Virus record (IMG/VR): IMGVR_UViG_3300009158_000031
Coordinates: 186,001 to 250,000 of that record
Length of the DNA stretch: 64,000 nucleotides
Reading direction: 5' to 3' (one strand)
Part shown: positions 10,809-63,265 of the stretch, in pieces
Position numbering within the stretch: position 1 is the first letter of the stretch
How the letters are laid out: the number at the start of each line of letters is the position of its first letter
Program-made: the position numbers and the translations under genes
The notes under the pieces: generated by a model
The model's input: the letters and a program-made list of their open reading frames with translations, nothing else
Told to the model about the DNA's origin: nothing
Database searches by the model: none

Positions 10809-10856
10809 TGTTAATAACTTTCAATAATTAAATTTTTTTATTCCGCAAAAAAGTAT
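10809..10856 (+). promoter_or_regulatory. Early-type promoter copy lacking the -7 element
   Basis: TGTTAATAACTTT...TTTTTTATTCC...AAAAAAGTAT followed directly by a coding ATG instead of TATATTT. Confidence 0.55.
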
Positions 10857-11708: not shown

Positions 11709-11770
11709 TGTTAATAACTTTTTACGAAAACAGTTTTTTATTCCACAAAAAAGTATTATATTTATACTAT
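11709..11770 (+). promoter_or_regulatory. Early-type promoter with DnaA-box-like element
   Basis: TGTTAATAACTTT...TTTTTTATTCC...TATTATATTTATACTAT. Confidence 0.75.
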
Positions 11771-12525: not shown

Positions 12526-13533
12526 ATGGAAAGAAAATTAGCAAGCATTCAAGTCATTCGAGACATTCGTCCTATTGAAGGAGCAGATGCAATCGAATTA
12601 GCAATCATTAATGATTGGCAAGTAGTAGTCGCAAAAAGCGTAGGTCATCAAGTTGGCGATCATGTTGTTTATTGTGAAATTGATTCATTCTTACCTATAA
12701 GAGAAGAATTCGAATTCTTGCGAAAAAGTTCTTATAGGAAGATGGATGATCTAGAAGGATTTCGTCTTAGGACTATAAAACTTCGAGGACAAATATCACA
12801 AGGACTTATCGTACCAATAAGTATATTTGGTGATTTTGGATGGACCGCATATGAAGGTCTTGATGTTACCGAAAGATTAGGAATTATAAAATACGAACCA
12901 CCTATCCCTGCAGAATTAGCCGGTAAAGTAAAAGGAAACTTTCCTTCATTTATACCAAAGACTGACGAAGAAAGAATTCAAAATCTAACTGACAAATATG
13001 AGACTTGGAAAACTCAACCATTTTATGTTACTGAAAAATTAGATGGATCATCCGCAACCTACTACTTCCGCAATGGAGAATTTGGAGTGTGTTCTAGAAA
13101 TCTAGATCTTGAAGAAACTGAAGGTAATACCTTTTGGAAGATTGCTCGAGAATTAAAGATAGAAGAATGGTTAGGAACACAATCAATTAATTATGCCATT
13201 CAAGGTGAGTTAATTGGTGAAGGTATTCAAGGAAATCCTTATAAGATCAAAGGACAAACGGTTCGCTTCTTTAACGCATTCAATATAGACAAATATGAAT
13301 ACTTAAGTTTAGAAGAATTCGAATCCCTAATCACTTCAATGAAGTTAAAAACCGTTCCAATTATCGATCGTGCATTTACTTTACCTAATACAATCGAAGA
13401 ACTTCTTAATTATGCCGATAAGAAAAGTGAATTGAATAATCAATTTGATCGTGAAGGTGTCGTTATTCGTAGTATCGATCGAAAAATCAGTTTCAAAGTA
13501 ATCAGTAACAAATTTCTACTAAACGAAAAATAA
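12526..13533 (+). CDS. RNA ligase, DRB0094 family
   Basis: N-terminal OB-like domain (IEGADAIE, KLRGQISQGL), PKTDEERIQN, TEKLDGSS, QGELIG, REGVV, FKVISNKFL. Confidence 0.9.
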   Translation: MERKLASIQVIRDIRPIEGADAIELAIINDWQVVVAKSVGHQVGDHVVYCEIDSFLPIREEFEFLRKSSYRKMDDLEGFRLRTIKLRGQISQGLIVPISIFGDFGWTAYEGLDVTERLGIIKYEPPIPAELAGKVKGNFPSFIPKTDEERIQNLTDKYETWKTQPFYVTEKLDGSSATYYFRNGEFGVCSRNLDLEETEGNTFWKIARELKIEEWLGTQSINYAIQGELIGEGIQGNPYKIKGQTVRFFNAFNIDKYEYLSLEEFESLITSMKLKTVPIIDRAFTLPNTIEELLNYADKKSELNNQFDREGVVIRSIDRKISFKVISNKFLLNEK

Positions 13534-14521: not shown

Positions 14522-14584
14522 TGTTAATAACTTTTAGACTCGAAATTTTTTAATCTCAAGTTTTTGTATTATATTTGTTATATT
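14522..14584 (+). promoter_or_regulatory. Early-type promoter with DnaA-box-like element
   Basis: TGTTAATAACTTT...TATTATATTTGTTATAT (Bacteroidota -7 TAnnTTTG). Confidence 0.75.
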
Positions 14585-14914: not shown

Positions 14915-15163
14915 ATGAAAAACTCAGCAATGTTAATAACTGGTCTAGTAACCGTAGTATTTACCATCCTATTCGTATCAGCAATCTTTGCATGGCCAAT
15001 TCAATTACTTTGGAATCACTGCTTAGTTGGTGCAGTAAATGGCGTTAACCCTATTGGTTTCTGGCAAGCGCTAGGAATTCTAATCTTATTTACTCTTTTA
15101 TTCACACCTAAAACCAGTCAAATAACCAAAGATGAAAAACCAAATACTCCAAAAAATAGCTAA
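14915..15163 (+). CDS. Membrane protein
   Basis: LWN...IGFWQALG motif between hydrophobic helices. Confidence 0.65.
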   Translation: MKNSAMLITGLVTVVFTILFVSAIFAWPIQLLWNHCLVGAVNGVNPIGFWQALGILILFTLLFTPKTSQITKDEKPNTPKNS

Positions 15164-27318: not shown

Positions 27319-27380
27319 TGTTAATAACTTTCTCACAAAACATTTTTTTATTACAACCTTTTTTATTATATTTGTATATA
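27319..27380 (+). promoter_or_regulatory. Early-type promoter with DnaA-box-like element
   Basis: TGTTAATAACTTT...TTTTTTATT...TATTATATTTGTATAT. Confidence 0.75.
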
Positions 27381-27681: not shown

Positions 27682-27764
27682 TGTTAATAACTTTGTTAAT
27701 AAGTTTTGAAACAAATAGTAAAATAAATTTTTTTATTCCACAAATAAGTATTATATTTATATAT
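27682..27764 (+). promoter_or_regulatory. Early-type promoter with two DnaA-box-like elements
   Basis: TGTTAATAACTTTGTTAATAA...TTTTTTATTCCAC...TATTATATTTATATAT. Confidence 0.75.
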
Positions 27765-28046: not shown

Positions 28047-28108
28047 TGTTAATAACTTTCCCATCAAACATTTTTTTATACCAAAAAAAAGTATTATATT
28101 TATACTAT
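28047..28108 (+). promoter_or_regulatory. Early-type promoter with DnaA-box-like element
   Basis: TGTTAATAACTTT...TATTATATTTATACTAT; inverted copy TTATTAACA at 28032. Confidence 0.75.
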
Positions 28109-38750: not shown

Positions 38751-41700
38751 ATGAGAAACAAACATATGAAAAATCCTATTTTAATTTGCCTGTTACTATT
38801 TAATTTAATTGTAATTGGACAAACAACACCTAAAGAAAGATACATAAACAATTCTGATTATCTTTCTAAAAACTCCTTAGTCGATTACAAAAGCTATTAC
38901 GGAGATTCCATACAAGGATTCGACGAAGCAGCTATGAAAGTTGAACTACTAAGACGAAACGTTTTTGGTTCAGAATACATCAACTACATTGCTCTTGTAA
39001 AAAGAGAATGGGTAAATCAAAAGTACGGTATCAAACCTGTACTACCTATCAATTCAAACAACCGACCTATTGGAGGTCCTAACTCAGTTAATTCACCTGG
39101 TAATGCTTGTGTGAATGAAGACTTTGAGCTTACTGCACCTGGAGCTTATAATGGAATGAATTCTGTTTTAGGATGGACAATTCAAAGTGGACAAAATACT
39201 TCCAATATCTGTTGTGGAAATCCTACATATGGTGCTGGCTGTGTTGCTAATCCTATTGCTAATTGGAATGCAGGTAGTCCTGAATTTTCTATTGTTGCTA
39301 CTCCAATACTACCTGCTCCTAGTTGTGCTAATCCTCCTGGATTTAGTATTGACAATGTATCAATACCTAATTCACCTCTTGGCGGTAACCGAGTTGCAAG
39401 ACTACAAAACTCATGTCCAACCGGTTTGATGACTCGAATTATGACACAATTTCCTGTTTCAAATTCTAATACCTTATTTCAATTTTGTTATGCTGGTTCA
39501 TGGGATGGTGTTCATGAATGTTGTGGACAACCTGCTTTTAGAATCGATATGTATAATTGTACAGGTTCATTAATCCCAATACCATGTGCCAATGTAAGCC
39601 TAACTCCTTCCGGACAATCTTGTCAAAGTGGAGTTCCTGGATATCAGGTAACCAGTGGAGTTTCATGGGTTAATTGGCAAACAAAATATATTGACTTAAC
39701 TCCTTATATTGGTCAGTGTATTAGAATTGTGGTAACTTGCTCAGATTGTTCTTATTCTGGACATCATGGAACTGCTTATTTTGATGCAAGATGCGGTGGT
39801 CAATTAGTTGGAGTTGGATTAGGTGGAGTTGGTGGAAACATTGCAGGACCTGTTAGTTATTGTGCTGGTTCAAATCAAGCTATTATTGCCGCACCATTGG
39901 GATACTCGTCATATCAATGGATATCTCCTATCACAGGAACAATTCCTGCTAATGCAGGAGGTACAGCTCCAGTATTAACCATAAGTCCAGTAGTTGCAGG
40001 TTTAGTGTATACAGTTCAGTTAAACTCACCATCAGGGTGTTCTTATATTGCAACCAATACAATCATGCCTACTCTTGTAAACATTGCAGGTATTGGTTCA
40101 GGCACAAGTTGTGCAGGAGGATCAAGTGGAACGGGTACTGTTCAAGGTAATGGCAGTGGCACAGGATACAATTATACTTGGGTAAATTCAAATAATGCTG
40201 TAGTTGGTACCTCAGCAACAGTAAGTGGACTGCTTCCAGGAACATATAGCGTAACTATAACTGGTCTTGGCGCTGCAGGATGTGGTTCAGCAACATCAAC
40301 TATATCAATAGGAGTTGGAATACCTCAAATGCAAAATCTATTAAAACCGTATTGTGGTTCTCAAGCCTATTTAAGTGTAACGGGTAATAGTGTTCAGTGG
40401 TCTACCAACAATACAGCTATCTCCGCTCCATTAGGAGTGGCAATGGGATACACAGTAAACAATCCAGTACAGGCTTCAGTATACACAGTTACCTATACTT
40501 CATTACAAAATTGTAATGAAGCAGCTTCATTCACCCTAATACCATCTCCGCCGGGCAGTATATCATTACTAACTACTTCTGTTTGTTTAAACTCGACAAA
40601 TGGCAGTGGAACTATTAATCTAACTCCTGCATCTGGTTCTCCTCCTGGAGCTAATTCATATTCAGTATGGAATTCTAATAATACTCCGGTTTACAATTCA
40701 TCATTGTCTCCTACTAATCAAAATAATTATTTGTTTGGAAACATGGGAACCGGTAGTTATCAAGTAAGAGTATTTGATGGTTCCTGTGCATACACAACTT
40801 CCTTTATTATACCTACTCATGTATTTTCTCCTACATTAAGTCCAACCTCAACAACTCTATGTCCTGGTGGAGGTATTGCAGCCGGAGTAGTATTTAGTAT
40901 TCCACCATCATTATCTCAATACACTTACTCTTGGACACCTAATATCTTTTTAGCAGGAAACACTCAACAATCAACGATTATCATACCAAATCTTGCAGTA
41001 GGTACGCAATCAAATATAACTTACTCAGTTGTAATTACTCCTACTGCTATTAATTGTCCGATGACTCGTACATTAAATTTATGGGCAATCAATCCACCAA
41101 TTCCAACTATTACTGCAATACCTAATATGTGTAACAATATGCTTCCATATCAAGTATTGGCTAATCCCAGTGGTGGTATCTTTACCGGAGTTGGAATGAG
41201 TACATTAGGTTTAATCTCTCCGACTGCTTCACTATTAGGAATCAATAACTTTACATATGCCATTTCAATTAGTACTTGCGCATCATCTAATACTGGAAGT
41301 TATCAGGTATCATATTTCAATACTTCATCATTAAGCTCTTCAATAAATCCTATATGTTCTACTAATTCAACAATAAATCTTATGACTATTGTTCAGAATA
41401 CCTTAGGATCTTGGTCAGGTAATTATATAACGAATAACATATTCAATCCAGCAAATCTAAATGGAGTATACTCATTAACCTACAATAATTTATCAACACC
41501 AAATCCTACAGTATGTCCTTCATCTACTCAAATGAATATATCGGTTACTAATACAATAATTCCGACTATTGCAAATTCCAATCCATTCTGTACGAATGCC
41601 TCCTCTTTTGTATTGATCGCTAATCCAAATGGAGGAATCTGGTCTAACAATTCTGCAGTGAGCGGTTTAGGTATTGTAACTCCTTCATTGACATCTCCTA

Positions 41701-43718
41701 CAAATACAACGGTTAATTATGTCGTTAATGTTGGTCCATGTATAAACACAAACACATTCAACATATATCCATCAACTTTCAATACGGCTTCTTTAACTGG
41801 ATCTATCCCTAATTTATGCGTAACGAGCTCATCAATAAATCTAATGTCAATCGTACAAAATACGACTGGATCTTGGTCAGGAATGAATGTTACTCAAAAC
41901 ATATTCAACCCTTCAGGATTACCGACCGGAAATTATACTTTAACATACAATACCAACTCGGCTCCTAATGTTACTCTATGTCCAGATAACCGAACAATAA
42001 ACATATCGGTTCTTAATCCGGCATCTCCGAACATTACTACATTCGGACCTATATGTAGCAAAGATGCTATTATGCAAATGACCGTTACTCCTAATTCTGG
42101 TAGTTGGATTTCTACTCCATATCTAAACATTAATGGAATATTAAATCCTTCGCTATGTCCTATTGGAATTAATGCCATTCAATATGTAATAGGAACTAAT
42201 ACTTGTTCGGCTCAACAAACAAAAACCTTTGTGGTTGAGATGTTCATTCCATCAACGATAACAAATCAAATACCTGACTTGTGTAATACCAGCTCTCCCA
42301 TAAATCTTAATTCATATTCTGGTTTTCCTGGATCTTGGTCAGGATTAGGAATCAATGGTTCAATGTTTACTCCATCGAATTCAGGAACATTAATTCTAGT
42401 ACATACCACATCATCATCTAGTGGTTTATGTCCTAGTACGTCAAGCATATCAGTTAGAGTATATTCATTACAATCTCCAGTAATAATCAAGCCAAATTCT
42501 GTATGTAACACATATGCGCCTTTCCAATTACAAGTAAATCCAATCGGTGGTATATTCGGAGGTAATGGATCTAATACTAACGGAATTTTTAATCCAGCAT
42601 ATGGAGCGATAGGAAACAATATAATTAATTACAGCATTTCTGCCGGTCCTTGTATAGCATATGCACAGACTACTGTTAATATTGAGAAATTTATATCGGC
42701 TGATCTAGATCGATACCCTAAAACCGTTTATTGTAAAGGTACTGAATATCCTTTTAATCTGAATTCGTTAGTCAAAAATCCAAATTATAATTGGTCTGGT
42801 CCTGGAGTAAATGGTTATATGTTCGATCCACAAATGGCAAACATCGGAAACAACCTAATATATTATCGAACGCATTCTGCACCAACGGCTTCATTATGTC
42901 CGGATGAAAAATCATTTAACATAAGGGTTGCTCAAATAAGTAAACCCATCATATCGCTATCTGATTCAATTGGTTGTGTTCCTCTTAGAGTAATTCTCAA
43001 TTCAAACGAAAATACTGGATTATCTTCTTGGAAATTTAGTAATGGATATTCTAGTGAAGCCAATTCTCTTGCATATACATTTACTTCAAGCGGAATACAT
43101 TCAATAATATTCTCATATATCAATGATGAAGGTTGTGTATCGCCAAATCAAATGATTACTCTTATTAGAGTTGATGAGGTACCTTTTCCCAAGTTTCAAT
43201 TACCAAAATCCATTTATGCAGGAGATTCAGAAATCCAAGCAATAAATCTAACTCCTAATGTAGGAAGTTACACTTACACATGGATGGTATCTAATGGATA
43301 TTCAGTAAACACAATTAATCTTGCATACGATCCCAAGAAAATAGGCAAGTACGAAATAACATTAATTGCAAAGACGGTTAATGGATGCACGGCATCTACT
43401 AGAAAAATGATAGAGATACAAAACGAATTTGAAGTACATATCCCAAATACTTTCACTCCTAATAGAGATGGTCTCAACGATTATTTTCTTCCAGTATTTT
43501 CTGACTATGGAGTTGAGTTATCTTTTTATACACTAGAGATTTTCGATCGATGGGATCACTTAATTTATAGATCAATCGATCCTAAAAAAGGATGGGATGG
43601 AAAAGCCAAAAATGAATTATGTCAACAAGGATCCTATGTATACAGACTTAAGTTTTCTGATAAAGAGAAGAATGTGTATGAGAAGATTGGACATGTTCTC
43701 CTTTTAGGATCCGATTAA
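38751..43718 (+). CDS. Large secreted adhesin-like protein with T9SS type-B (gliding-motility-associated) C-terminal domain
   Basis: Signal peptide (likely start MKNPIL); repeated Ig/SprB/PKD-like modules (GSWSG...FNP); IPNTFTPNRDGLNDYF...IFDRW...WDG...YVY...GHVLL CTD. Confidence 0.85.
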   Translation: MRNKHMKNPILICLLLFNLIVIGQTTPKERYINNSDYLSKNSLVDYKSYYGDSIQGFDEAAMKVELLRRNVFGSEYINYIALVKREWVNQKYGIKPVLPINSNNRPIGGPNSVNSPGNACVNEDFELTAPGAYNGMNSVLGWTIQSGQNTSNICCGNPTYGAGCVANPIANWNAGSPEFSIVATPILPAPSCANPPGFSIDNVSIPNSPLGGNRVARLQNSCPTGLMTRIMTQFPVSNSNTLFQFCYAGSWDGVHECCGQPAFRIDMYNCTGSLIPIPCANVSLTPSGQSCQSGVPGYQVTSGVSWVNWQTKYIDLTPYIGQCIRIVVTCSDCSYSGHHGTAYFDARCGGQLVGVGLGGVGGNIAGPVSYCAGSNQAIIAAPLGYSSYQWISPITGTIPANAGGTAPVLTISPVVAGLVYTVQLNSPSGCSYIATNTIMPTLVNIAGIGSGTSCAGGSSGTGTVQGNGSGTGYNYTWVNSNNAVVGTSATVSGLLPGTYSVTITGLGAAGCGSATSTISIGVGIPQMQNLLKPYCGSQAYLSVTGNSVQWSTNNTAISAPLGVAMGYTVNNPVQASVYTVTYTSLQNCNEAASFTLIPSPPGSISLLTTSVCLNSTNGSGTINLTPASGSPPGANSYSVWNSNNTPVYNSSLSPTNQNNYLFGNMGTGSYQVRVFDGSCAYTTSFIIPTHVFSPTLSPTSTTLCPGGGIAAGVVFSIPPSLSQYTYSWTPNIFLAGNTQQSTIIIPNLAVGTQSNITYSVVITPTAINCPMTRTLNLWAINPPIPTITAIPNMCNNMLPYQVLANPSGGIFTGVGMSTLGLISPTASLLGINNFTYAISISTCASSNTGSYQVSYFNTSSLSSSINPICSTNSTINLMTIVQNTLGSWSGNYITNNIFNPANLNGVYSLTYNNLSTPNPTVCPSSTQMNISVTNTIIPTIANSNPFCTNASSFVLIANPNGGIWSNNSAVSGLGIVTPSLTSPTNTTVNYVVNVGPCINTNTFNIYPSTFNTASLTGSIPNLCVTSSSINLMSIVQNTTGSWSGMNVTQNIFNPSGLPTGNYTLTYNTNSAPNVTLCPDNRTINISVLNPASPNITTFGPICSKDAIMQMTVTPNSGSWISTPYLNINGILNPSLCPIGINAIQYVIGTNTCSAQQTKTFVVEMFIPSTITNQIPDLCNTSSPINLNSYSGFPGSWSGLGINGSMFTPSNSGTLILVHTTSSSSGLCPSTSSISVRVYSLQSPVIIKPNSVCNTYAPFQLQVNPIGGIFGGNGSNTNGIFNPAYGAIGNNIINYSISAGPCIAYAQTTVNIEKFISADLDRYPKTVYCKGTEYPFNLNSLVKNPNYNWSGPGVNGYMFDPQMANIGNNLIYYRTHSAPTASLCPDEKSFNIRVAQISKPIISLSDSIGCVPLRVILNSNENTGLSSWKFSNGYSSEANSLAYTFTSSGIHSIIFSYINDEGCVSPNQMITLIRVDEVPFPKFQLPKSIYAGDSEIQAINLTPNVGSYTYTWMVSNGYSVNTINLAYDPKKIGKYEITLIAKTVNGCTASTRKMIEIQNEFEVHIPNTFTPNRDGLNDYFLPVFSDYGVELSFYTLEIFDRWDHLIYRSIDPKKGWDGKAKNELCQQGSYVYRLKFSDKEKNVYEKIGHVLLLGSD

Positions 43719-43721
43719 AAT

Positions 43722-43782
43722 TGTTAATAACTTTCCCGTAATAAATTTTTTTATTCCAAAAAGTTTTATTATATTTGTATAT
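43722..43782 (+). promoter_or_regulatory. Early-type promoter with DnaA-box-like element
   Basis: TGTTAATAACTTT...TTTTTTATTCC...TATTATATTTGTATAT. Confidence 0.75.
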
Positions 43783-43802: not shown

Positions 43803-43997
43803 ATGGAAAATAATTTTGAAGTATCCGATCTTGAATTACTCACAACATCGGAATTAAAAACTCTACTAATCGATTTATTCGATGGTAATGCAGGTGAAAT
43901 TCTTTATGGTTTTCGAGAAATGGGAATTACCAAAGATGCTAATCTTAAATCGGCAATAATCCGATACATCATTCGTAAACAACCCATCAATGCATAA
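43803..43997 (+). CDS. Hypothetical early protein
   Basis: First ORF after promoter. Confidence 0.55.
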   Translation: MENNFEVSDLELLTTSELKTLLIDLFDGNAGEILYGFREMGITKDANLKSAIIRYIIRKQPINA

Positions 43998-44310
43998 ACG
44001 AAGAAGCGATCGTAACCATCTCATCTACAAAATAGAAAATCTCTCAACCGGAGAATTCTATATAGGAGTTACAGTCGTAACCGGTAGAGCATATCTTAAA
44101 TCTCTTAAATCTCGATGGAAGCGACATATCTATAAAGCAATGGTGCTTCGTGAAGAATGGTTATTTCCAAAAGCGATTCGCGAATATGGCGAATCTCAAT
44201 TTAAACCTGAGATTATCGAAATTGTACGTGGTAAATCTACCGCATTCGGAAGAGAATCTCAACTTATTAACGAAATCCGACCAGCATACAACACACGAAT
44301 GAAATGTTAA
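43990..44310 (+). CDS. GIY-YIG nuclease-like protein
   Basis: LIYKIEN...FYIGVT...RWKRH...AIREYG...E..LI...P.YN. Confidence 0.8.
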   Translation: MHKRRSDRNHLIYKIENLSTGEFYIGVTVVTGRAYLKSLKSRWKRHIYKAMVLREEWLFPKAIREYGESQFKPEIIEIVRGKSTAFGRESQLINEIRPAYNTRMKC

Positions 44311-44387
44311 TAACTTTTTTACATTTAGCCAAAAATAAGTTTCAAAAAATTTTTTTATTCCAATAAAAAGTATTATATTTGTTATAT
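44305..44387 (+). promoter_or_regulatory. Early-type promoter with DnaA-box-like element
   Basis: TGTTAATAACTTT...TTTTTTATTCC...TATTATATTTGTTATAT. Confidence 0.75.
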
Positions 44388-44420: not shown

Positions 44421-44732
44421 ATGAAATCTAAATCAAGTATCGAAAAAATTGCTGCAATTCAATCATTAGTATCGAAATCATTTAACATCGAACTACCTAA
44501 ATTACTTTCACCATCTCGTACTGGTGAAATTGCATACATTCGCCAAATATCAATGTATCTATGCAGATTCAACACAACCGCTTCTCTTAAAATAATTGCG
44601 GCCGAACATAATCGTACTAATCACGGTACCGTTATCCATGCTTCCGAAGTAATTGGATTCGATTATCGCAAAAACGAAAAAGTACGTAATCAAATCATCG
44701 CATTAGAAACCCAAATTAAAACAATAGCATAA
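44421..44732 (+). CDS. Stand-alone DnaA C-terminal (domain IV) helix-turn-helix protein
   Basis: LLSPSRTGEIAYIRQISMYLCR...SLKIIAAEHNRTNHGTVIHA matches DnaA domain IV (R.....RQ.AMYL...SL..IG..F..RDHTTV.HA); start at 44421. Confidence 0.85.
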   Translation: MKSKSSIEKIAAIQSLVSKSFNIELPKLLSPSRTGEIAYIRQISMYLCRFNTTASLKIIAAEHNRTNHGTVIHASEVIGFDYRKNEKVRNQIIALETQIKTIA

Positions 44733-44991: not shown

Positions 44992-46194
44992 ATGGCAACA
45001 TTAGTTTGGTTAACCCATTCATTTCGTACAGACTCTAGGCTAACATCTAAATTATCCGGTCCTTGTACATTCGTATATTATTCACCATACTACTTTGCTG
45101 GTGATCGGGAAAAACAAATTCTGAAACAATGTTCAACGGCTAATCTTGAAGCATTTTACGAATCCCTTGATATTATGCGTAAATCGCTTAAGGCTATTGG
45201 CCACGAGTTTTACGTCTTCAAACAATCAAATCCTATTGAACATATCAATAGCCTAATTGATAAACATGGATTTGATCGAGTTGTAATAGATCTTCCTCTT
45301 TTTGGAATGTGGAAAACAACCGATCCAATGCAAATCAAAGTTCCTTTTGAATTAATCGATTCTGATCTTGTCGACGATACTTGTTTTAATATGACGGCTA
45401 AATCTAGGTGGATGTCACATACTCGCAAAATATCTACACACAAACCAAATCAATGGAATTCTGAAATTGTACCAAATCCTATTAATGAAGCAATCAAAAG
45501 TTATCCGCAATACACTAAGAATAACTTGATTATGCCTCACATCATAACATCTCGTGCATCGGCTATGGCTCCTACATATGCTCAAACTCGAGATAAACAT
45601 AATGGCCAAACTCGTTTATCTACTGCATTTCAAAATGGTACGGTAGATCCTTGCAATATGTTCTATAGCATCGCAAACGATTTTCTAAAATCTGGCGCAG
45701 ACTTCTCGATAAATGAAGGTGCCCATGCTGCAATGCTTCGTCAATTTGCTTTTCGTGAAATGACAATCATTCAAACTCGTCGAGCTAACCTAACCATGGA
45801 AGATTCCCCAATGCAATGGGCACAACAATTTATAACAGCAACCTCTCTACAAAATCTAAAGAGTCAAACAAATCCAGATAGCACTTTAACATTTGAACAA
45901 ATCAAAACGGCTAGTACCAGCGATACATTAATAAATACAATTCTCGCTGAATCGTTTCAAGTTGGTGTAATGCCAAATCGTGCTAGAATGTTCTTTGCCG
46001 GATGGATGTTTTACAATGCACCAACTGGTCAACAAGCACTTGAATGGTTAATCGATACATTTGATCTTCTTCTCTTAGATGGTCAATGTCCTACAAATTA
46101 TACACAATGTACATCCGCTATGAATATGCAATATGGTAAAGTAATGTTGCTTAATCGTCATAACGTTAAAGCATTACTTGCCTACGAAAATTAA
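44992..46194 (+). CDS. Divergent photolyase/cryptochrome-family protein
   Basis: VWLTHSFRTD, TRLS, LRQFAFRE, GVMPNRARMFFA, LLDG..PTN. Confidence 0.65.
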   Translation: MATLVWLTHSFRTDSRLTSKLSGPCTFVYYSPYYFAGDREKQILKQCSTANLEAFYESLDIMRKSLKAIGHEFYVFKQSNPIEHINSLIDKHGFDRVVIDLPLFGMWKTTDPMQIKVPFELIDSDLVDDTCFNMTAKSRWMSHTRKISTHKPNQWNSEIVPNPINEAIKSYPQYTKNNLIMPHIITSRASAMAPTYAQTRDKHNGQTRLSTAFQNGTVDPCNMFYSIANDFLKSGADFSINEGAHAAMLRQFAFREMTIIQTRRANLTMEDSPMQWAQQFITATSLQNLKSQTNPDSTLTFEQIKTASTSDTLINTILAESFQVGVMPNRARMFFAGWMFYNAPTGQQALEWLIDTFDLLLLDGQCPTNYTQCTSAMNMQYGKVMLLNRHNVKALLAYEN

Positions 46195-46837: not shown

Positions 46838-46898
46838 TGTTAATAACTTTCCATCAATAAATTTTTTTATTCCACTTATTTGTTTTATATTTGTATAT
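46838..46898 (+). promoter_or_regulatory. Early-type promoter with DnaA-box-like element
   Basis: TGTTAATAACTTT...TTTTTTATTCCAC...TTATATTTGTATAT. Confidence 0.75.
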
Positions 46899-47417: not shown

Positions 47418-47479
47418 TGTTAATAACTTTTTGTCAAAATATTTTTTTATTCCACAAATTTGTTTTATATTTGTTATAT
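47418..47479 (+). promoter_or_regulatory. Early-type promoter with DnaA-box-like element
   Basis: TGTTAATAACTTT...TTTTTTATTCCAC...TTATATTTGTTATAT. Confidence 0.75.
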
Positions 47480-47503: not shown

Positions 47504-48598
47504 ATGGAAGCAATCCAATTAACAAATGCTCAAATCCTCAAAGCTGAAAAACGTCATGAACGTTCGAGATTTGCAGATAAGTATCAGCTAAAAAACCCAT
47601 ACAATGGAACTGAATATTTGTTCCGTGGAATATGGCGTTCAAATCGAGAATTTATTATTTCTCGAGGAACAGAAACTTATTTGGTACCATTTGATAATGT
47701 GAATCCAAATCCAACAAACGCAAAAATCGAATCTGCTGAGAATCGCAAAATCGAATTGGTACTTATTGATGATCTACATTATGATGATCGTATCTTTCAA
47801 CCAATGCGAACCGGAACCCCAATCGATTACATGTTTTCAAACGATGGTGGAATTTATCCGGCTACAAATTACATGGTTATCGGTGATCCTGGCATTGGGA
47901 AATCTACACAAACACTTGATCTCCTTGCAAAAATCAAAAAGAACGAACCTCATCGAAAAATACTTTTCATCTCTGGCGAAATGAATCAAATCGATATGTA
48001 TGGTTATGTTAAACGTTATCCATCATTCGGTAAAATACCTACTCTCTTCCTTTGTGATTATCTAGACGAGGATCCTAAAGAAATCATCGAACAAACATTT
48101 AATCAAGGTTGGGATATCATCCTTATCGATTCATTTATCGAAGTTCAAGAATCCGTTCAAGCTTCTTCAAATATGACAAGAACTGCAGCAGAAAAATGGT
48201 TAATCGATATGATGGTCACTCAAAATAAAGGAAACAATGAAGCAAATCTATTTACATCCGTACTTGCAATTCAACAAGTAACTAAGGGTGGTAATTTCGT
48301 TGGTTCCAATAAATTAAAACATAATACAACCGGTATGATCGAATTAAGATACTCATCCGAATTTACCGGTGATCGTTATGCTAAGGTAACTAAAAATCGT
48401 CGAGGTTTCAAATACGAAAAAATATACTTCTCTCTTGATAATCCACTCGAAGTAGAATACGATCAAAAACGACTTGAACGAGATGAAGAAATTCGTAAAC
48501 GTTTACAACGTGAAAAAGAAACTCTTCTTTCCGAGGAAGAGAAATTCAATAAGATTTTCGGTATCATACAACCGGAATTAACCGAAACAGAAAATTAA
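47504..48598 (+). CDS. RadA/Sms-like RecA-family ATPase
   Basis: GDPGIGKST Walker A, FISGE, ILIDS Walker B, VTKGG.F.G...LKH, KNR. Confidence 0.8.
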   Translation: MEAIQLTNAQILKAEKRHERSRFADKYQLKNPYNGTEYLFRGIWRSNREFIISRGTETYLVPFDNVNPNPTNAKIESAENRKIELVLIDDLHYDDRIFQPMRTGTPIDYMFSNDGGIYPATNYMVIGDPGIGKSTQTLDLLAKIKKNEPHRKILFISGEMNQIDMYGYVKRYPSFGKIPTLFLCDYLDEDPKEIIEQTFNQGWDIILIDSFIEVQESVQASSNMTRTAAEKWLIDMMVTQNKGNNEANLFTSVLAIQQVTKGGNFVGSNKLKHNTTGMIELRYSSEFTGDRYAKVTKNRRGFKYEKIYFSLDNPLEVEYDQKRLERDEEIRKRLQREKETLLSEEEKFNKIFGIIQPELTETEN

Positions 48599-52680: not shown

Positions 52681-52741
52681 TGTTAATAACTTTTTTCAAA
52701 AAGATTTTTTTATTCCGCAAAGATTTATTATATTTGTATAT
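52681..52741 (+). promoter_or_regulatory. Early-type promoter with DnaA-box-like element
   Basis: TGTTAATAACTTT...TTTTTTATTCC...TATTATATTTGTATAT. Confidence 0.75.
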
Positions 52742-54521: not shown

Positions 54522-54601
54522 GCCCTTATGGTGGAATTGGTAGACATGCCAGACTTAGGATCTGGTGCTTAGGCGTGTAGGTTCGAGTCCTACTAAGGGT
54601 A
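54522..54601 (+). tRNA. tRNA-Leu(TAG), CCA not encoded
   Basis: Acceptor GCCCTTA/TAAGGGT, anticodon arm CCAGA-CTTAGGA-TCTGG, T arm GTAGG-TTCGAGT-CCTAC. Confidence 0.95.
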
Positions 54602-54618
54602 CTTAAAATAACTATATT

Positions 54619-54941: not shown

Positions 54942-55013
54942 TGCGGGATAGAGCAGTGGTAGCTCGGCGGGCTCATAACCCGTAGGTCGCAGGTTCGAAT
55001 CCTGCTCCCGCTA
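54942..55013 (+). tRNA. Initiator tRNA-fMet(CAT), CCA not encoded
   Basis: TGCGGGA/TCCCGCT acceptor with 1:72 mismatch, GGG-CTCATAA-CCC anticodon arm, GCAGG-TTCGAAT-CCTGC T arm. Confidence 0.95.
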
Positions 55014-55015
55014 CT

Positions 55016-63203: not shown

Positions 63204-63265
63204 TGTTAATAACTTTTTGTCAATAAAGTTTTTTATTCCACAAATTTTTATTATATTTGTTATAT
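63204..63265 (+). promoter_or_regulatory. Early-type promoter with DnaA-box-like element
   Basis: TGTTAATAACTTT...TTTTTTATTCCAC...TATTATATTTGTTATAT. Confidence 0.75.

What the first reader, a model, noticed from the sequence alone, without database searches (positions are those of the whole stretch)
44421..44732. Stand-alone DnaA domain IV as an early gene
Seen: 103-aa protein with only the DnaA DNA-binding domain; the signature reads NRTNHGTVIHA instead of GGRDHTTVLHA. Inference: a dominant-negative inhibitor of host oriC firing and/or the regulator of the phage's own TGTTAATAAC promoter boxes; the substitutions may shift box specificity.
Basis: partly seen in the sequence, partly recalled or inferred. 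Interest (0 to 1): 0.65.

Follow-up and report, generated by a model that had tools for sequence, protein, structure and literature searches.

The report
Phage stand-alone DnaA DNA-binding domain
A freshwater jumbo phage encodes a 103-residue protein that is only the DNA-binding domain of the bacterial replication initiator DnaA, with altered base-reading residues, and its early-type promoters each carry a DnaA-box-like site (TTATTAACA) that this protein probably reads, although binding has not been shown.

Summary
ORF 44421-44732 (+) is a complete, stand-alone DnaA domain IV (Pfam 1.3e-18; model 1 A rmsd from DNA-bound DnaA domains). It keeps R399, H434 and H439 (E. coli numbering) but has K, N and G at P423, D433 and T435.

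The window lies in a 254-kb T4-like jumbo phage of a type IX secretion (T9SS) Bacteroidota host. TGTTAATAAC is real: 26 copies, all on the + strand, each at the 5' edge of a host-sigma-A-type promoter. It starts 48 nt before the -7 element, or 58 or 69 nt, which are whole helical turns.

Its invariant part is a 9-mer, TTnTTAACA, in the register of the DnaA box TTWTNCACA, with C6 replaced by A. The same box heads promoters in three other jumbo phages whose DnaA-IV homologues are only 36-43% identical. In those three phages the homologue's own promoter carries a rare TTAACA-N5-TTAACA double box.

Best reading (about 0.45): a DnaA-derived transcription factor retargeted to the phage's own promoter boxes. 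Blocking host oriC is less likely. Stand-alone DnaA_C proteins are already annotated in Bacteroidota phages, so only the promoter link is new. No binding has been shown.

The parts
44421..44732 (+). 103-aa stand-alone DnaA domain IV protein (P0001). R33, H68 and H73 keep R399, H434 and H439; K57, N67 and G69 replace P423, D433 and T435.
44305..44314 (+). TGTTAATAAC box of the gene's own promoter. It overlaps the stop codon of the upstream GIY-YIG ORF and starts 69 nt before the -7 element, the standard 48 plus two helical turns.
44350..44361 (+). T-rich block TTTTTTTATTCC, the conserved -33-side part of the promoter cassette
   Evidence: alignment of the 26 cassettes
44371..44382 (+). Conserved core TATTATATTTGT holding the Bacteroidota-type -7 element TAnnTTTG (44374-44381). 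The predicted transcription start is near 44386.
   Evidence: the consensus is from own knowledge
43722..43731 (+). Box of the neighbouring upstream promoter (drives ORFs 43803-43997 and 43990-44310), standard spacing
46838..46847 (+). Box of a downstream promoter, standard spacing
47418..47427 (+). Box of the promoter of the 364-aa P-loop ATPase gene (47504-48598)
10809..10818 (+). Box followed by a truncated cassette with no -7 core, before ORF 10855
11709..11718 (+). Box promoter of the operon that ends in an RNA ligase (12526-13533)
14522..14531 (+). Box promoter, standard spacing
14931..14940 (+). Box copy inside ORF 14915-15163 with no promoter core downstream; probably not functional
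27319..27328 (+). Box promoter, standard spacing
27682..27691 (+). Box promoter with the +2-turn spacing (67 nt to the core)
28047..28056 (+). Box promoter, standard spacing
52681..52690 (+). Box promoter, standard spacing
63204..63213 (+). Box promoter, standard spacing

Best explanation
The gene encodes a sequence-specific DNA-binding protein derived from DnaA domain IV. It has lost the initiator's ATPase and oligomerisation domains and has been retargeted from the canonical box TTATNCACA to TTnTTAACA. That 9-mer, written TGTTAAnAA on the coding strand, marks the upstream edge of the phage's host-sigma-A-type promoters. Its centre lies about 55 nt before the predicted transcription start, or one or two helical turns further. 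The promoter of the gene itself is one of these. Bound there as a monomer, the protein would modulate these early promoters. Most likely it touches or positions RNA polymerase, as a class I activator does. Alternatively it occupies the place of the alpha C-terminal domain and shuts early transcription off. Shown: the fold, the residue changes, the box, its position and phasing, and the co-occurrence across phages.
For: (1) The DNA-binding fold is intact, with the minor-groove R399 and the backbone and major-groove residues R407, H434, T436 and H439 kept. The residue roles come from PMC5742627, PMC7561715 and PMC2533591.
(2) The box resembles a DnaA box. The reverse complement of TGTTAATAA is TTATTAACA, which matches 7 of the 8 specified positions of TTATNCACA. 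A random 10-mer of this composition does so with P about 0.0035-0.004.
(3) Among 92 phased boxes in six phages, found allowing 2 mismatches anywhere, variation falls almost only on box position 7 and position 10. Position 7 corresponds to DnaA-box position 3, the W of TTWTNCACA. Position 10 lies outside the 9-mer. The invariant block is therefore a 9-mer in the DnaA-box register.
(4) The kept TTA part is the part R399 reads. The changed centre lies in the TnCACA part read by helix 434-451, where the protein has its changes N67 and G69, plus K57 at residue 423 on the neighbouring helix. Helix-5 N-terminal residues are held responsible for box differences in other bacteria (PMC5043019).
(5) The box start lies 48 nt before TAnnTTT in 15 G000, 20 G002 (47 or 48 nt), 9 G001 and 9 G003 promoters. 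The other spacings are 58 nt (7 in G002; 58 or 59 nt in 2 in G000) and 69 nt (1 in G000, the DnaA-IV promoter). These are whole helical turns.
(6) The same 10-mer is among the top two intergenic 10-mers in G000, G002, G001 and G003 (26, 35, 11 and 11 copies). Their core promoters differ and their DnaA-IV homologues are 36-43% identical, yet they share R..NH[GA]TV[IL]H.
(7) The rare TTAACA-N5-TTAACA double box (11-bp period) lies directly before the homologue's gene in G001 (the only copy in the record), G002 (1 of 3) and G003 (1 of 2). This echoes dnaA autoregulation (PMC8203912).
(8) The box is not a host-genome motif. Candidate host genomes of 3-4.3 Mb hold 11-19 copies, fewer than the reversed control. 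None of 20 sampled copies has the promoter spacing.
(9) There is precedent: the DnaA-like HTH of GafA activates gene transfer agent promoters (PMC9638019).
Against: No binding data exist. The pairing of residue 433 with box position 6 is recalled from the 1J1V paper and could not be checked, because that paper is not held.

G004 is as close to G000 as G002 is, and it has the same recognition helix (DNHATVLHA). Yet it uses mostly another upstream element, ATGTAATAT-N3-TGTA, and has only 2-3 exact boxes. So the box class and the protein do not simply co-vary.

A box invariant among phages whose proteins are about 40% identical could equally point to a more conserved reader, such as a host factor or RNA polymerase. 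Promoters used at time zero cannot depend on a protein that is not yet made.

GTTA-A-TAAC is also a 4-1-4 palindrome, which could suit a dimeric reader of another family. Co-occurrence could not be tested negatively, because all relatives without the gene are fragments.
Confidence: 0.45

Rival explanations
1. Host-directed competitor. The isolated DNA-binding domain occupies the host's DnaA boxes at oriC, the dnaA promoter and DnaA-regulated genes. It would block initiation or derepress the DnaA regulon without being able to oligomerise.
For: It is a complete domain IV lacking domains I-III. It is expressed from an early-type promoter. R399, H434 and H439 are kept. Pieces of the gene occur in contigs of three lake metatranscriptome runs. 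TTATTAACA lies about 40 nt before the dnaA start codon in eight Fluviicola genomes, so a host target of this sequence is conceivable.
Against: Three of six base-specific residues differ from canonical DnaA. The candidate host DnaA has D433, H434 and A435, against N, H and G here. N433 is fixed in most of the phage subfamily rather than drifting. Canonical boxes are at chance level in the window, 24 against 23.8 expected. A host-directed role does not explain why a DnaA-box-like 9-mer sits at a fixed, phased place in up to 35 phage promoters. The host is not known and its oriC was not found.
Confidence: 0.15
2. Phage origin-binding protein. It marks a phage replication origin made of its boxes, as DnaA_C proteins of small Bacteroidota phages are usually annotated ('replication initiation protein DnaA').
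For: Such annotations exist for Cellulophaga, Tenacibaculum and Polaribacter phages. In G002 one double-box promoter heads an operon with a clamp-loader-like gene. In T4-type phages, origins are promoters (own knowledge).
Against: There is no iteron-like cluster. The densest 300-bp windows of TGTTAA/TTAACA hold 4 sites in G000, and those inspected lie inside genes. Nearly every box has its own promoter and gene. The protein has no extra domain to recruit a helicase. No neighbour is conserved between phages.
Confidence: 0.1
3. The box is read by something else: host RNA polymerase alpha, a host factor, or another phage protein. The DnaA-IV protein then has an unrelated DNA target, and the resemblance of the box to a DnaA box is chance.
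For: The box is invariant across phages whose DnaA-IV is only 32-43% identical. G004 keeps the protein but largely changes the upstream element. The box has a palindromic core, GTTA-A-TAAC. Early promoters must fire before phage proteins exist. The phage also encodes a sigma factor.
Against: The chance of the resemblance is about 0.004. The conserved block has the length and register of a DnaA box, with the tolerated position where the canonical box is degenerate. The box is rarer than its control in candidate host genomes and is not promoter-linked there. TTAACA boxes precede the protein's own gene in three phages.
Confidence: 0.3

Closest known systems
DnaA domain IV (E. coli 1J1V, M. tuberculosis 3PVP)
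   Same: Same fold (TM 0.85-0.92, rmsd about 1 A) and a gapless alignment. R399, R407, H434, T436 and H439 are kept. The predicted target is a 9-mer of the same register.
   Different: It has no domains I-III, so no ATP switch, oligomerisation or helicase loading. P423K, D433N and T435G are changed, and G426A and F429H are fixed in the subfamily. The proposed box has A instead of the universal C at position 6.
GafA / GafY-type activators of gene transfer agents (DnaA-like HTH)
   Same: A DnaA-domain-IV-like HTH is used as a promoter-upstream transcription factor of phage-derived genes. In Hyphomicrobiales it is a separate small protein (PMC9638019). NCBIfam PRK06030 small proteins give weak hits.
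   Different: GafA/GafY work with a sigma-like, RNA-polymerase-omega-binding partner. No conserved partner gene is found next to the phage gene. Sequence similarity of GafA to DnaA is remote, whereas here it is plain.
Stand-alone DnaA_C proteins annotated in phages (Cellulophaga phi19:1 and phi19:3, Tenacibaculum Gundel_1, Flavobacterium tooticki6-1, many uncultured freshwater phages)
   Same: Proteins of 92-200 aa with the same fold in Bacteroidota and freshwater phages. Many short relatives occur in metagenomes.
   Different: They are named 'DnaA' or 'replication initiator' by homology only, and no function or target site is described in the papers searched. The subfamily here is the minimal form with the NH[GA]TV signature, in T4-like jumbo phages.
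Full-length DnaA acting as a transcription factor
   Same: It binds boxes in promoters, activates or represses, autoregulates its own gene, and stimulates lambda pR through RNA polymerase (PMC8203912).
   Different: Those effects depend partly on the nucleotide state and on oligomerisation, which this protein lacks.
Class I activator sites, P2 Ogr sites at about -55, and T4-type early promoter cassettes (own knowledge, not tested here)
   Same: A single upstream site centred near -55 with alternatives one and two helical turns further. Repeated promoter cassettes precede small early genes of a T4-like phage.

Membership tests
Bac_DnaA_C (PF08299) / DnaA domain IV fold | Profile match above the curated cut-off over the whole domain | tested here: met
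   67.2 bits against a cut-off of 31.5, profile positions 2-67 of 69
Bac_DnaA_C (PF08299) / DnaA domain IV fold | Helical fold with HTH and basic loop superposable on solved domain IV | tested here: met
   pLDDT 92.7; TM 0.85/0.92 and rmsd 0.9-1.2 A to 3PVP and 1J1V
Bac_DnaA_C (PF08299) / DnaA domain IV fold | Minor-groove arginine (R399) | tested here: met
   R33; invariant in the subfamily alignment
Canonical DnaA-box reader (TTATNCACA) | All six base-specific residues: R399, P423, D433, H434, T435, H439 | tested here: not met
   Three of the six are kept. K57, N67 and G69 replace P423, D433 and T435 (residue list).
Canonical DnaA-box reader (TTATNCACA) | Canonical boxes present in excess in its genome | tested here: not met
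   24 matches with up to 1 mismatch against 23.8 expected
DnaA replication initiator | AAA+ domain III and domain I | tested here: not met
   103 aa with a single Pfam domain. TIGR00362 matches only model positions 346-437, at 67 bits against a cut-off of 343.9.
GafA/GafY-type DnaA-like transcription activators | DnaA-like HTH that binds upstream of target promoters | not testable with these tools
   The HTH is present and a box-like site lies upstream of promoters. Binding was not measured.
GafA/GafY-type DnaA-like transcription activators | Sigma-like / RNA-polymerase-binding partner domain or adjacent gene | tested here: inconclusive
   The downstream genes (84 aa and a 400-aa photolyase-like protein) have no such domain and are not conserved next to the homologues. 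A sigma factor exists elsewhere in the genome.
Promoter-upstream activator site (class I type) | Fixed position upstream of the core promoter with alternatives differing by whole helical turns | tested here: met
   Spacings of 48, 58 and 69 nt to TAnnTTT in G000 and G002, and 48 nt in all G001 and G003 cases

The most novel reading that the evidence does not exclude
A clade of T4-like jumbo phages of freshwater Bacteroidota has turned the DNA-binding domain of the host replication initiator into a minimal transcription factor. A recognition switch (D433N, with T435G/A and loss of P423) moved its target from TTATNCACA to TTnTTAACA. That retargeted box became the common upstream element of the phages' host-polymerase promoters. 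Orientation and copy number then define regulatory classes: a single reversed box, or a double forward box before the factor's own gene.
Probability: 0.4. Interest if true: 0.7.

Novelty: new variant of a known kind. Interest (0 to 1): 0.6.

Why it matters
If the link holds, it gives a natural specificity switch in one of the best-studied bacterial DNA-binding domains. One lineage has N at 433 and A at box position 6, which is directly testable by swapping residues and bases. It would also provide the first regulatory logic for promoters of uncultured Bacteroidota jumbo phages. It would assign a function to a phage protein family that databases now label 'replication initiator' by homology alone. 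If the link fails, the finding is an ordinary, already annotated kind of phage HTH protein beside an unexplained but very clear promoter element.

Tried and rejected
1. The 1J1V paper, needed for atom-level contacts, is not held. Contacts are taken only at the level given by reviews.
2. No nucleotide match was found in the phage collection. The tblastn hits there were mostly unannotated records, possibly host dnaA contamination.
3. Covariation in more distant homologues failed. The contigs encoding P0011 and P0012 (T or Q at 433, N at 439) are only 0.6-2.6 kb, so no promoters could be read.
4. The negative co-occurrence test failed. Nine portal-related records lack the gene, but they are 23-59% complete fragments around the structural module, so absence means nothing.
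5. The host oriC and host box consensus were not found. The dnaA flanks of 80 Crocinitomicaceae-like genomes show no box cluster. TTATTAACA occurs 36 times against about 20 expected, and the genomes are related. TTATNCACA genome-wide is at control level.
6. Origin-like box clusters in the phages: none were found outside genes.
7. The box as the -35 element of the phage ECF-like sigma factor was rejected, because nothing is conserved 16-17 nt downstream.
8. RNA evidence is weak. Only contigs from RNA libraries were available, which may contain DNA. One starts at 44331, upstream of the predicted start, so no transcription start can be read.
10. Complex prediction was not used, because no protein-protein claim is made.

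Full report
WHAT IS THERE

The ORF 44421-44732 (+) starts with ATG and encodes 103 aa. The upstream in-frame TTG at 44379 lies inside the promoter core, so it is not the start. Pfam finds one domain, Bac_DnaA_C, at E 1.3e-18. PHROGs gives only a weak hit to a family of unknown function.

A profile of the family aligns without gaps to the solved DnaA domain IV of E. coli, B. subtilis, Aquifex, M. tuberculosis and Thermotoga. The AlphaFold2 model (pLDDT 92.7) superposes on the DNA-bound domains 3PVP and 1J1V at about 1 A rmsd.

Papers that cite the 1J1V structure name six residues that make base-specific contacts. R399, H434 and H439 are kept, as R33, H68 and H73. P423, D433 and T435 are K57, N67 and G69.

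CONTEXT

The window is bases 186001-250000 of a 254,393-bp virus record estimated 83% complete. Nearly all genes lie on one strand and GC is about 33%. The record encodes:
- a T4-type portal and a UvsX-like recombinase;
- an NAD-dependent ligase, RNA ligases, thymidylate synthase and a sigma factor;
- a 1655-aa protein with a type IX secretion signal.

It is therefore a T4-like jumbo phage of a Bacteroidota host. It recurs in freshwater metagenomes.

The only hint to the host is a 567-nt contig (P0009). Its product is the phage protein up to RQISMY and thereafter 100% identical to the DnaA C-terminus of lake Crocinitomicaceae. That host DnaA has D433, H434 and A435.

THE BOX

TGTTAATAAC occurs 26 times in the record, always on the coding strand. 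An alignment of the copies shows a cassette in this order:
- the box;
- a variable spacer, in some copies a terminator-like hairpin;
- the T-rich block TTTTTTTATTCC;
- the core TATTATATTTGT, which holds the Bacteroidota -7 element TAnnTTTG (consensus from own knowledge);
- the start codon about 35 nt further on.

The core resembles the candidate host's own dnaA promoter. Every exact core in the genome has a box, with 0-2 mismatches.

The genes behind these promoters are mostly small and poorly conserved. They also include the NAD ligase, an RNA ligase, a phosphoesterase, the phage sigma factor and the DnaA-IV gene itself. A second, unrelated promoter type, TCATATAA 14-53 nt before the start codon with nothing conserved upstream, precedes about 27 other genes. 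The box promoters therefore look like the host-polymerase (early) class. This supports 'early gene' by inference only.

POSITION

The box starts 48 nt before TAnnTTT in most promoters. The exceptions lie at 58 and 69 nt. The DnaA-IV gene's own promoter is the 69-nt case. If the TA of the -7 element is at -12, the box centre is near -55, -65 or -76. Steps of one helical turn are what a protein needs if it must face the polymerase from one side of the helix.

RELATION TO DnaA BOXES

The reverse complement of TGTTAATAA is TTATTAACA. Against TTATNCACA it differs only at position 6, apart from the free position 5. Random 10-mers of this composition reach that match with P about 0.004.

I collected 92 phased boxes from six phages, allowing two mismatches anywhere. 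Variation falls on box position 7, which is DnaA-box position 3 (the W of TTWTNCACA), and on position 10, outside the 9-mer. TGTTAA and AA are essentially invariant. The constrained block thus has the length and register of a DnaA box.

According to the review read, R399 reads TTA in the minor groove, and both are kept here. Helix 434-451 reads TnCACA, and here both the DNA centre and residues 433 and 435 are changed.

An Asp-to-Asn change paired with a C-to-A change would fit the usual preferences of these side chains. That is my inference. I could not verify which base D433 touches.

COMPARATIVE EVIDENCE

Homologues of 93-102 aa, 32-43% identical, occur in five other large virus records, G001-G005. 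They share the signature IA..H...NH[GA]TV[IL][HN]A. About half of G000's genes have counterparts in G002 and G004, at about 50% identity.

The identical 10-mer is among the top two intergenic 10-mers in G002 (35 copies), G001 (11 in 66 kb) and G003 (11 in 31 kb). It is always on the coding strand and at the same 48-nt spacing, although the core promoters differ. TGTTAA is the first or second hexamer of the promoter-upstream zone in these four phages. It ranks 13th in G004, and TTAACA ranks 20th in G005.

G005 mostly uses the same hexamer in the other orientation, single or as TTAACA-N5-TTAACA. That double box, with an 11-bp period, is rare. Yet it lies directly before the DnaA-IV gene in G001, G002 and G003. 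This is reminiscent of dnaA autoregulation. One of the two other G002 copies heads an operon with a clamp-loader-like gene.

The box is also frequent in closer portal relatives and absent from the more distant ones.

CONTROLS FOR A HOST READER

Five Crocinitomicaceae genomes hold 11-19 copies each, fewer than the reversed-pattern control. None of 20 sampled copies has a -7 element at the phage spacing. This weakens the idea of a common host motif, but not of a rare one, and the true host is unknown.

WHAT SPEAKS AGAINST THE LINK

- G004 has the same recognition helix as G003 but mostly uses another upstream element, ATGTAATAT-N3-TGTA. Its reverse complement contains TATTACA, one base shorter than TATTAACA. 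G004 has only a few TGTTAAWAA boxes.
- A box that is invariant while the protein diverges to about 40% identity might have a more conserved reader.
- GTTA-A-TAAC is also a short palindrome.
- A promoter used at the moment of infection cannot need a phage protein, so the protein could only modulate it.
- No clusters that would suggest an origin were found.
- No binding has been measured.

COMPARISON WITH WHAT IS KNOWN

Stand-alone DnaA_C proteins are common in phages of Bacteroidota and in freshwater viromes. They are annotated as DnaA or replication initiator. Short relatives abound in metagenomes, and N at position 433 occurs in 21 of 149 relatives, some of them full length. The protein as such is therefore not new.

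The nearest functional precedent is the DnaA-like HTH of GafA, which activates gene transfer agent promoters and is a separate small protein in some lineages. Full-length DnaA is itself a transcription factor.

New here is the promoter-linked, helically phased, DnaA-box-like element shared by several jumbo phages, and its plausible pairing with the altered recognition residues.

VERDICT

- Best explanation: a retargeted DnaA-domain transcription factor acting on the phage's own boxes, confidence about 0.45.
- The box is read by something else: 0.3.
- Host DnaA-box competitor: 0.15.
- Phage origin binder: 0.1.

Novelty: a new variant of a known kind. Interest: 0.6.

No alternative genetic code was used.

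Noticed in passing
window 38751-43718 (+): A 1655-aa phage protein with a PKD domain and a CHU_C type IX secretion signal at its C-terminus. It appears to be phage-encoded cargo for the host's T9SS and marks the host as a Bacteroidota.
   Followed up: partly
genome-wide; in the window e.g. 7614, 9010, 14589, 15895, 23878, 24934, 30961, 54232, 59776: A second promoter-like motif, TCATATAA(W), lies mostly 14-40 nt (up to 53 nt) before about 27 start codons. Nothing is conserved upstream, so it looks like a late class, perhaps served by the phage sigma factor.
   Followed up: partly
G000:C1:157936-158535 (outside the window; locus L148): A 199-aa sigma factor (regions 2 and 4_2), conserved in G001, G002, G004 and G005, sits behind a TGTTAATAAC-box promoter.
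   Followed up: partly
window 43990-44310 (+): A GIY-YIG homing-endonuclease-like ORF lies directly upstream. Its stop codon is the TAA inside the box of the DnaA-IV promoter.
   Followed up: no
protein P0009 (567-nt ENA contig); host loci L059, L060: The product is a chimera. Residues 1-45 are the phage DnaA-IV, and residues 46-102 are 100% identical to the Crocinitomicaceae DnaA C-terminus, joined at the shared RQISMY. It is either an assembly artefact or a real phage-host recombinant, and it is the only host hint.
   Followed up: partly
window 45057-46164: A contig from an RNA library joins 45057 to 46164. It skips 1106 nt, most of the 400-aa photolyase-like ORF 44992-46194, so a strain without that gene circulates.
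   Followed up: no
G001, G002, G003 (loci L004, L006, L008, about 80 nt before the homologue's start codon): The rare double box TTAACA-N5-TTAACA (11-bp period, forward orientation) precedes the DnaA-IV homologue's gene. G000 has none and uses a single reversed box two helical turns further out.
   Followed up: yes
G004 (record of L009), 13 promoters, e.g. 163345, 175695, 188667, 203415 in the orientation used: A close relative uses another upstream element, ATGTAATAT-N3-TGTA (two TGTA units 11 nt apart), at the same place as the box, although its DnaA-IV recognition helix is unchanged. This is unexplained.
   Followed up: partly
window 54522-54602 and 54942-55014: tRNA-Leu (anticodon TAG) and tRNA-Met genes.
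   Followed up: no
L012:4904-5004: Another viral contig encodes a 146-aa DnaA_C protein and has three near-canonical DnaA boxes within 100 bp. This hints that other phage DnaA_C proteins also have cognate sites in their own genomes.
   Followed up: no
host loci L086, L092, L106, L109, L117, L120, L123, L134, about 40 nt before the dnaA start codon: TTATTAACA is conserved in the dnaA leader of eight Fluviicola genomes. It could be a host site of the same sequence or chance in AT-rich DNA.
   Followed up: partly
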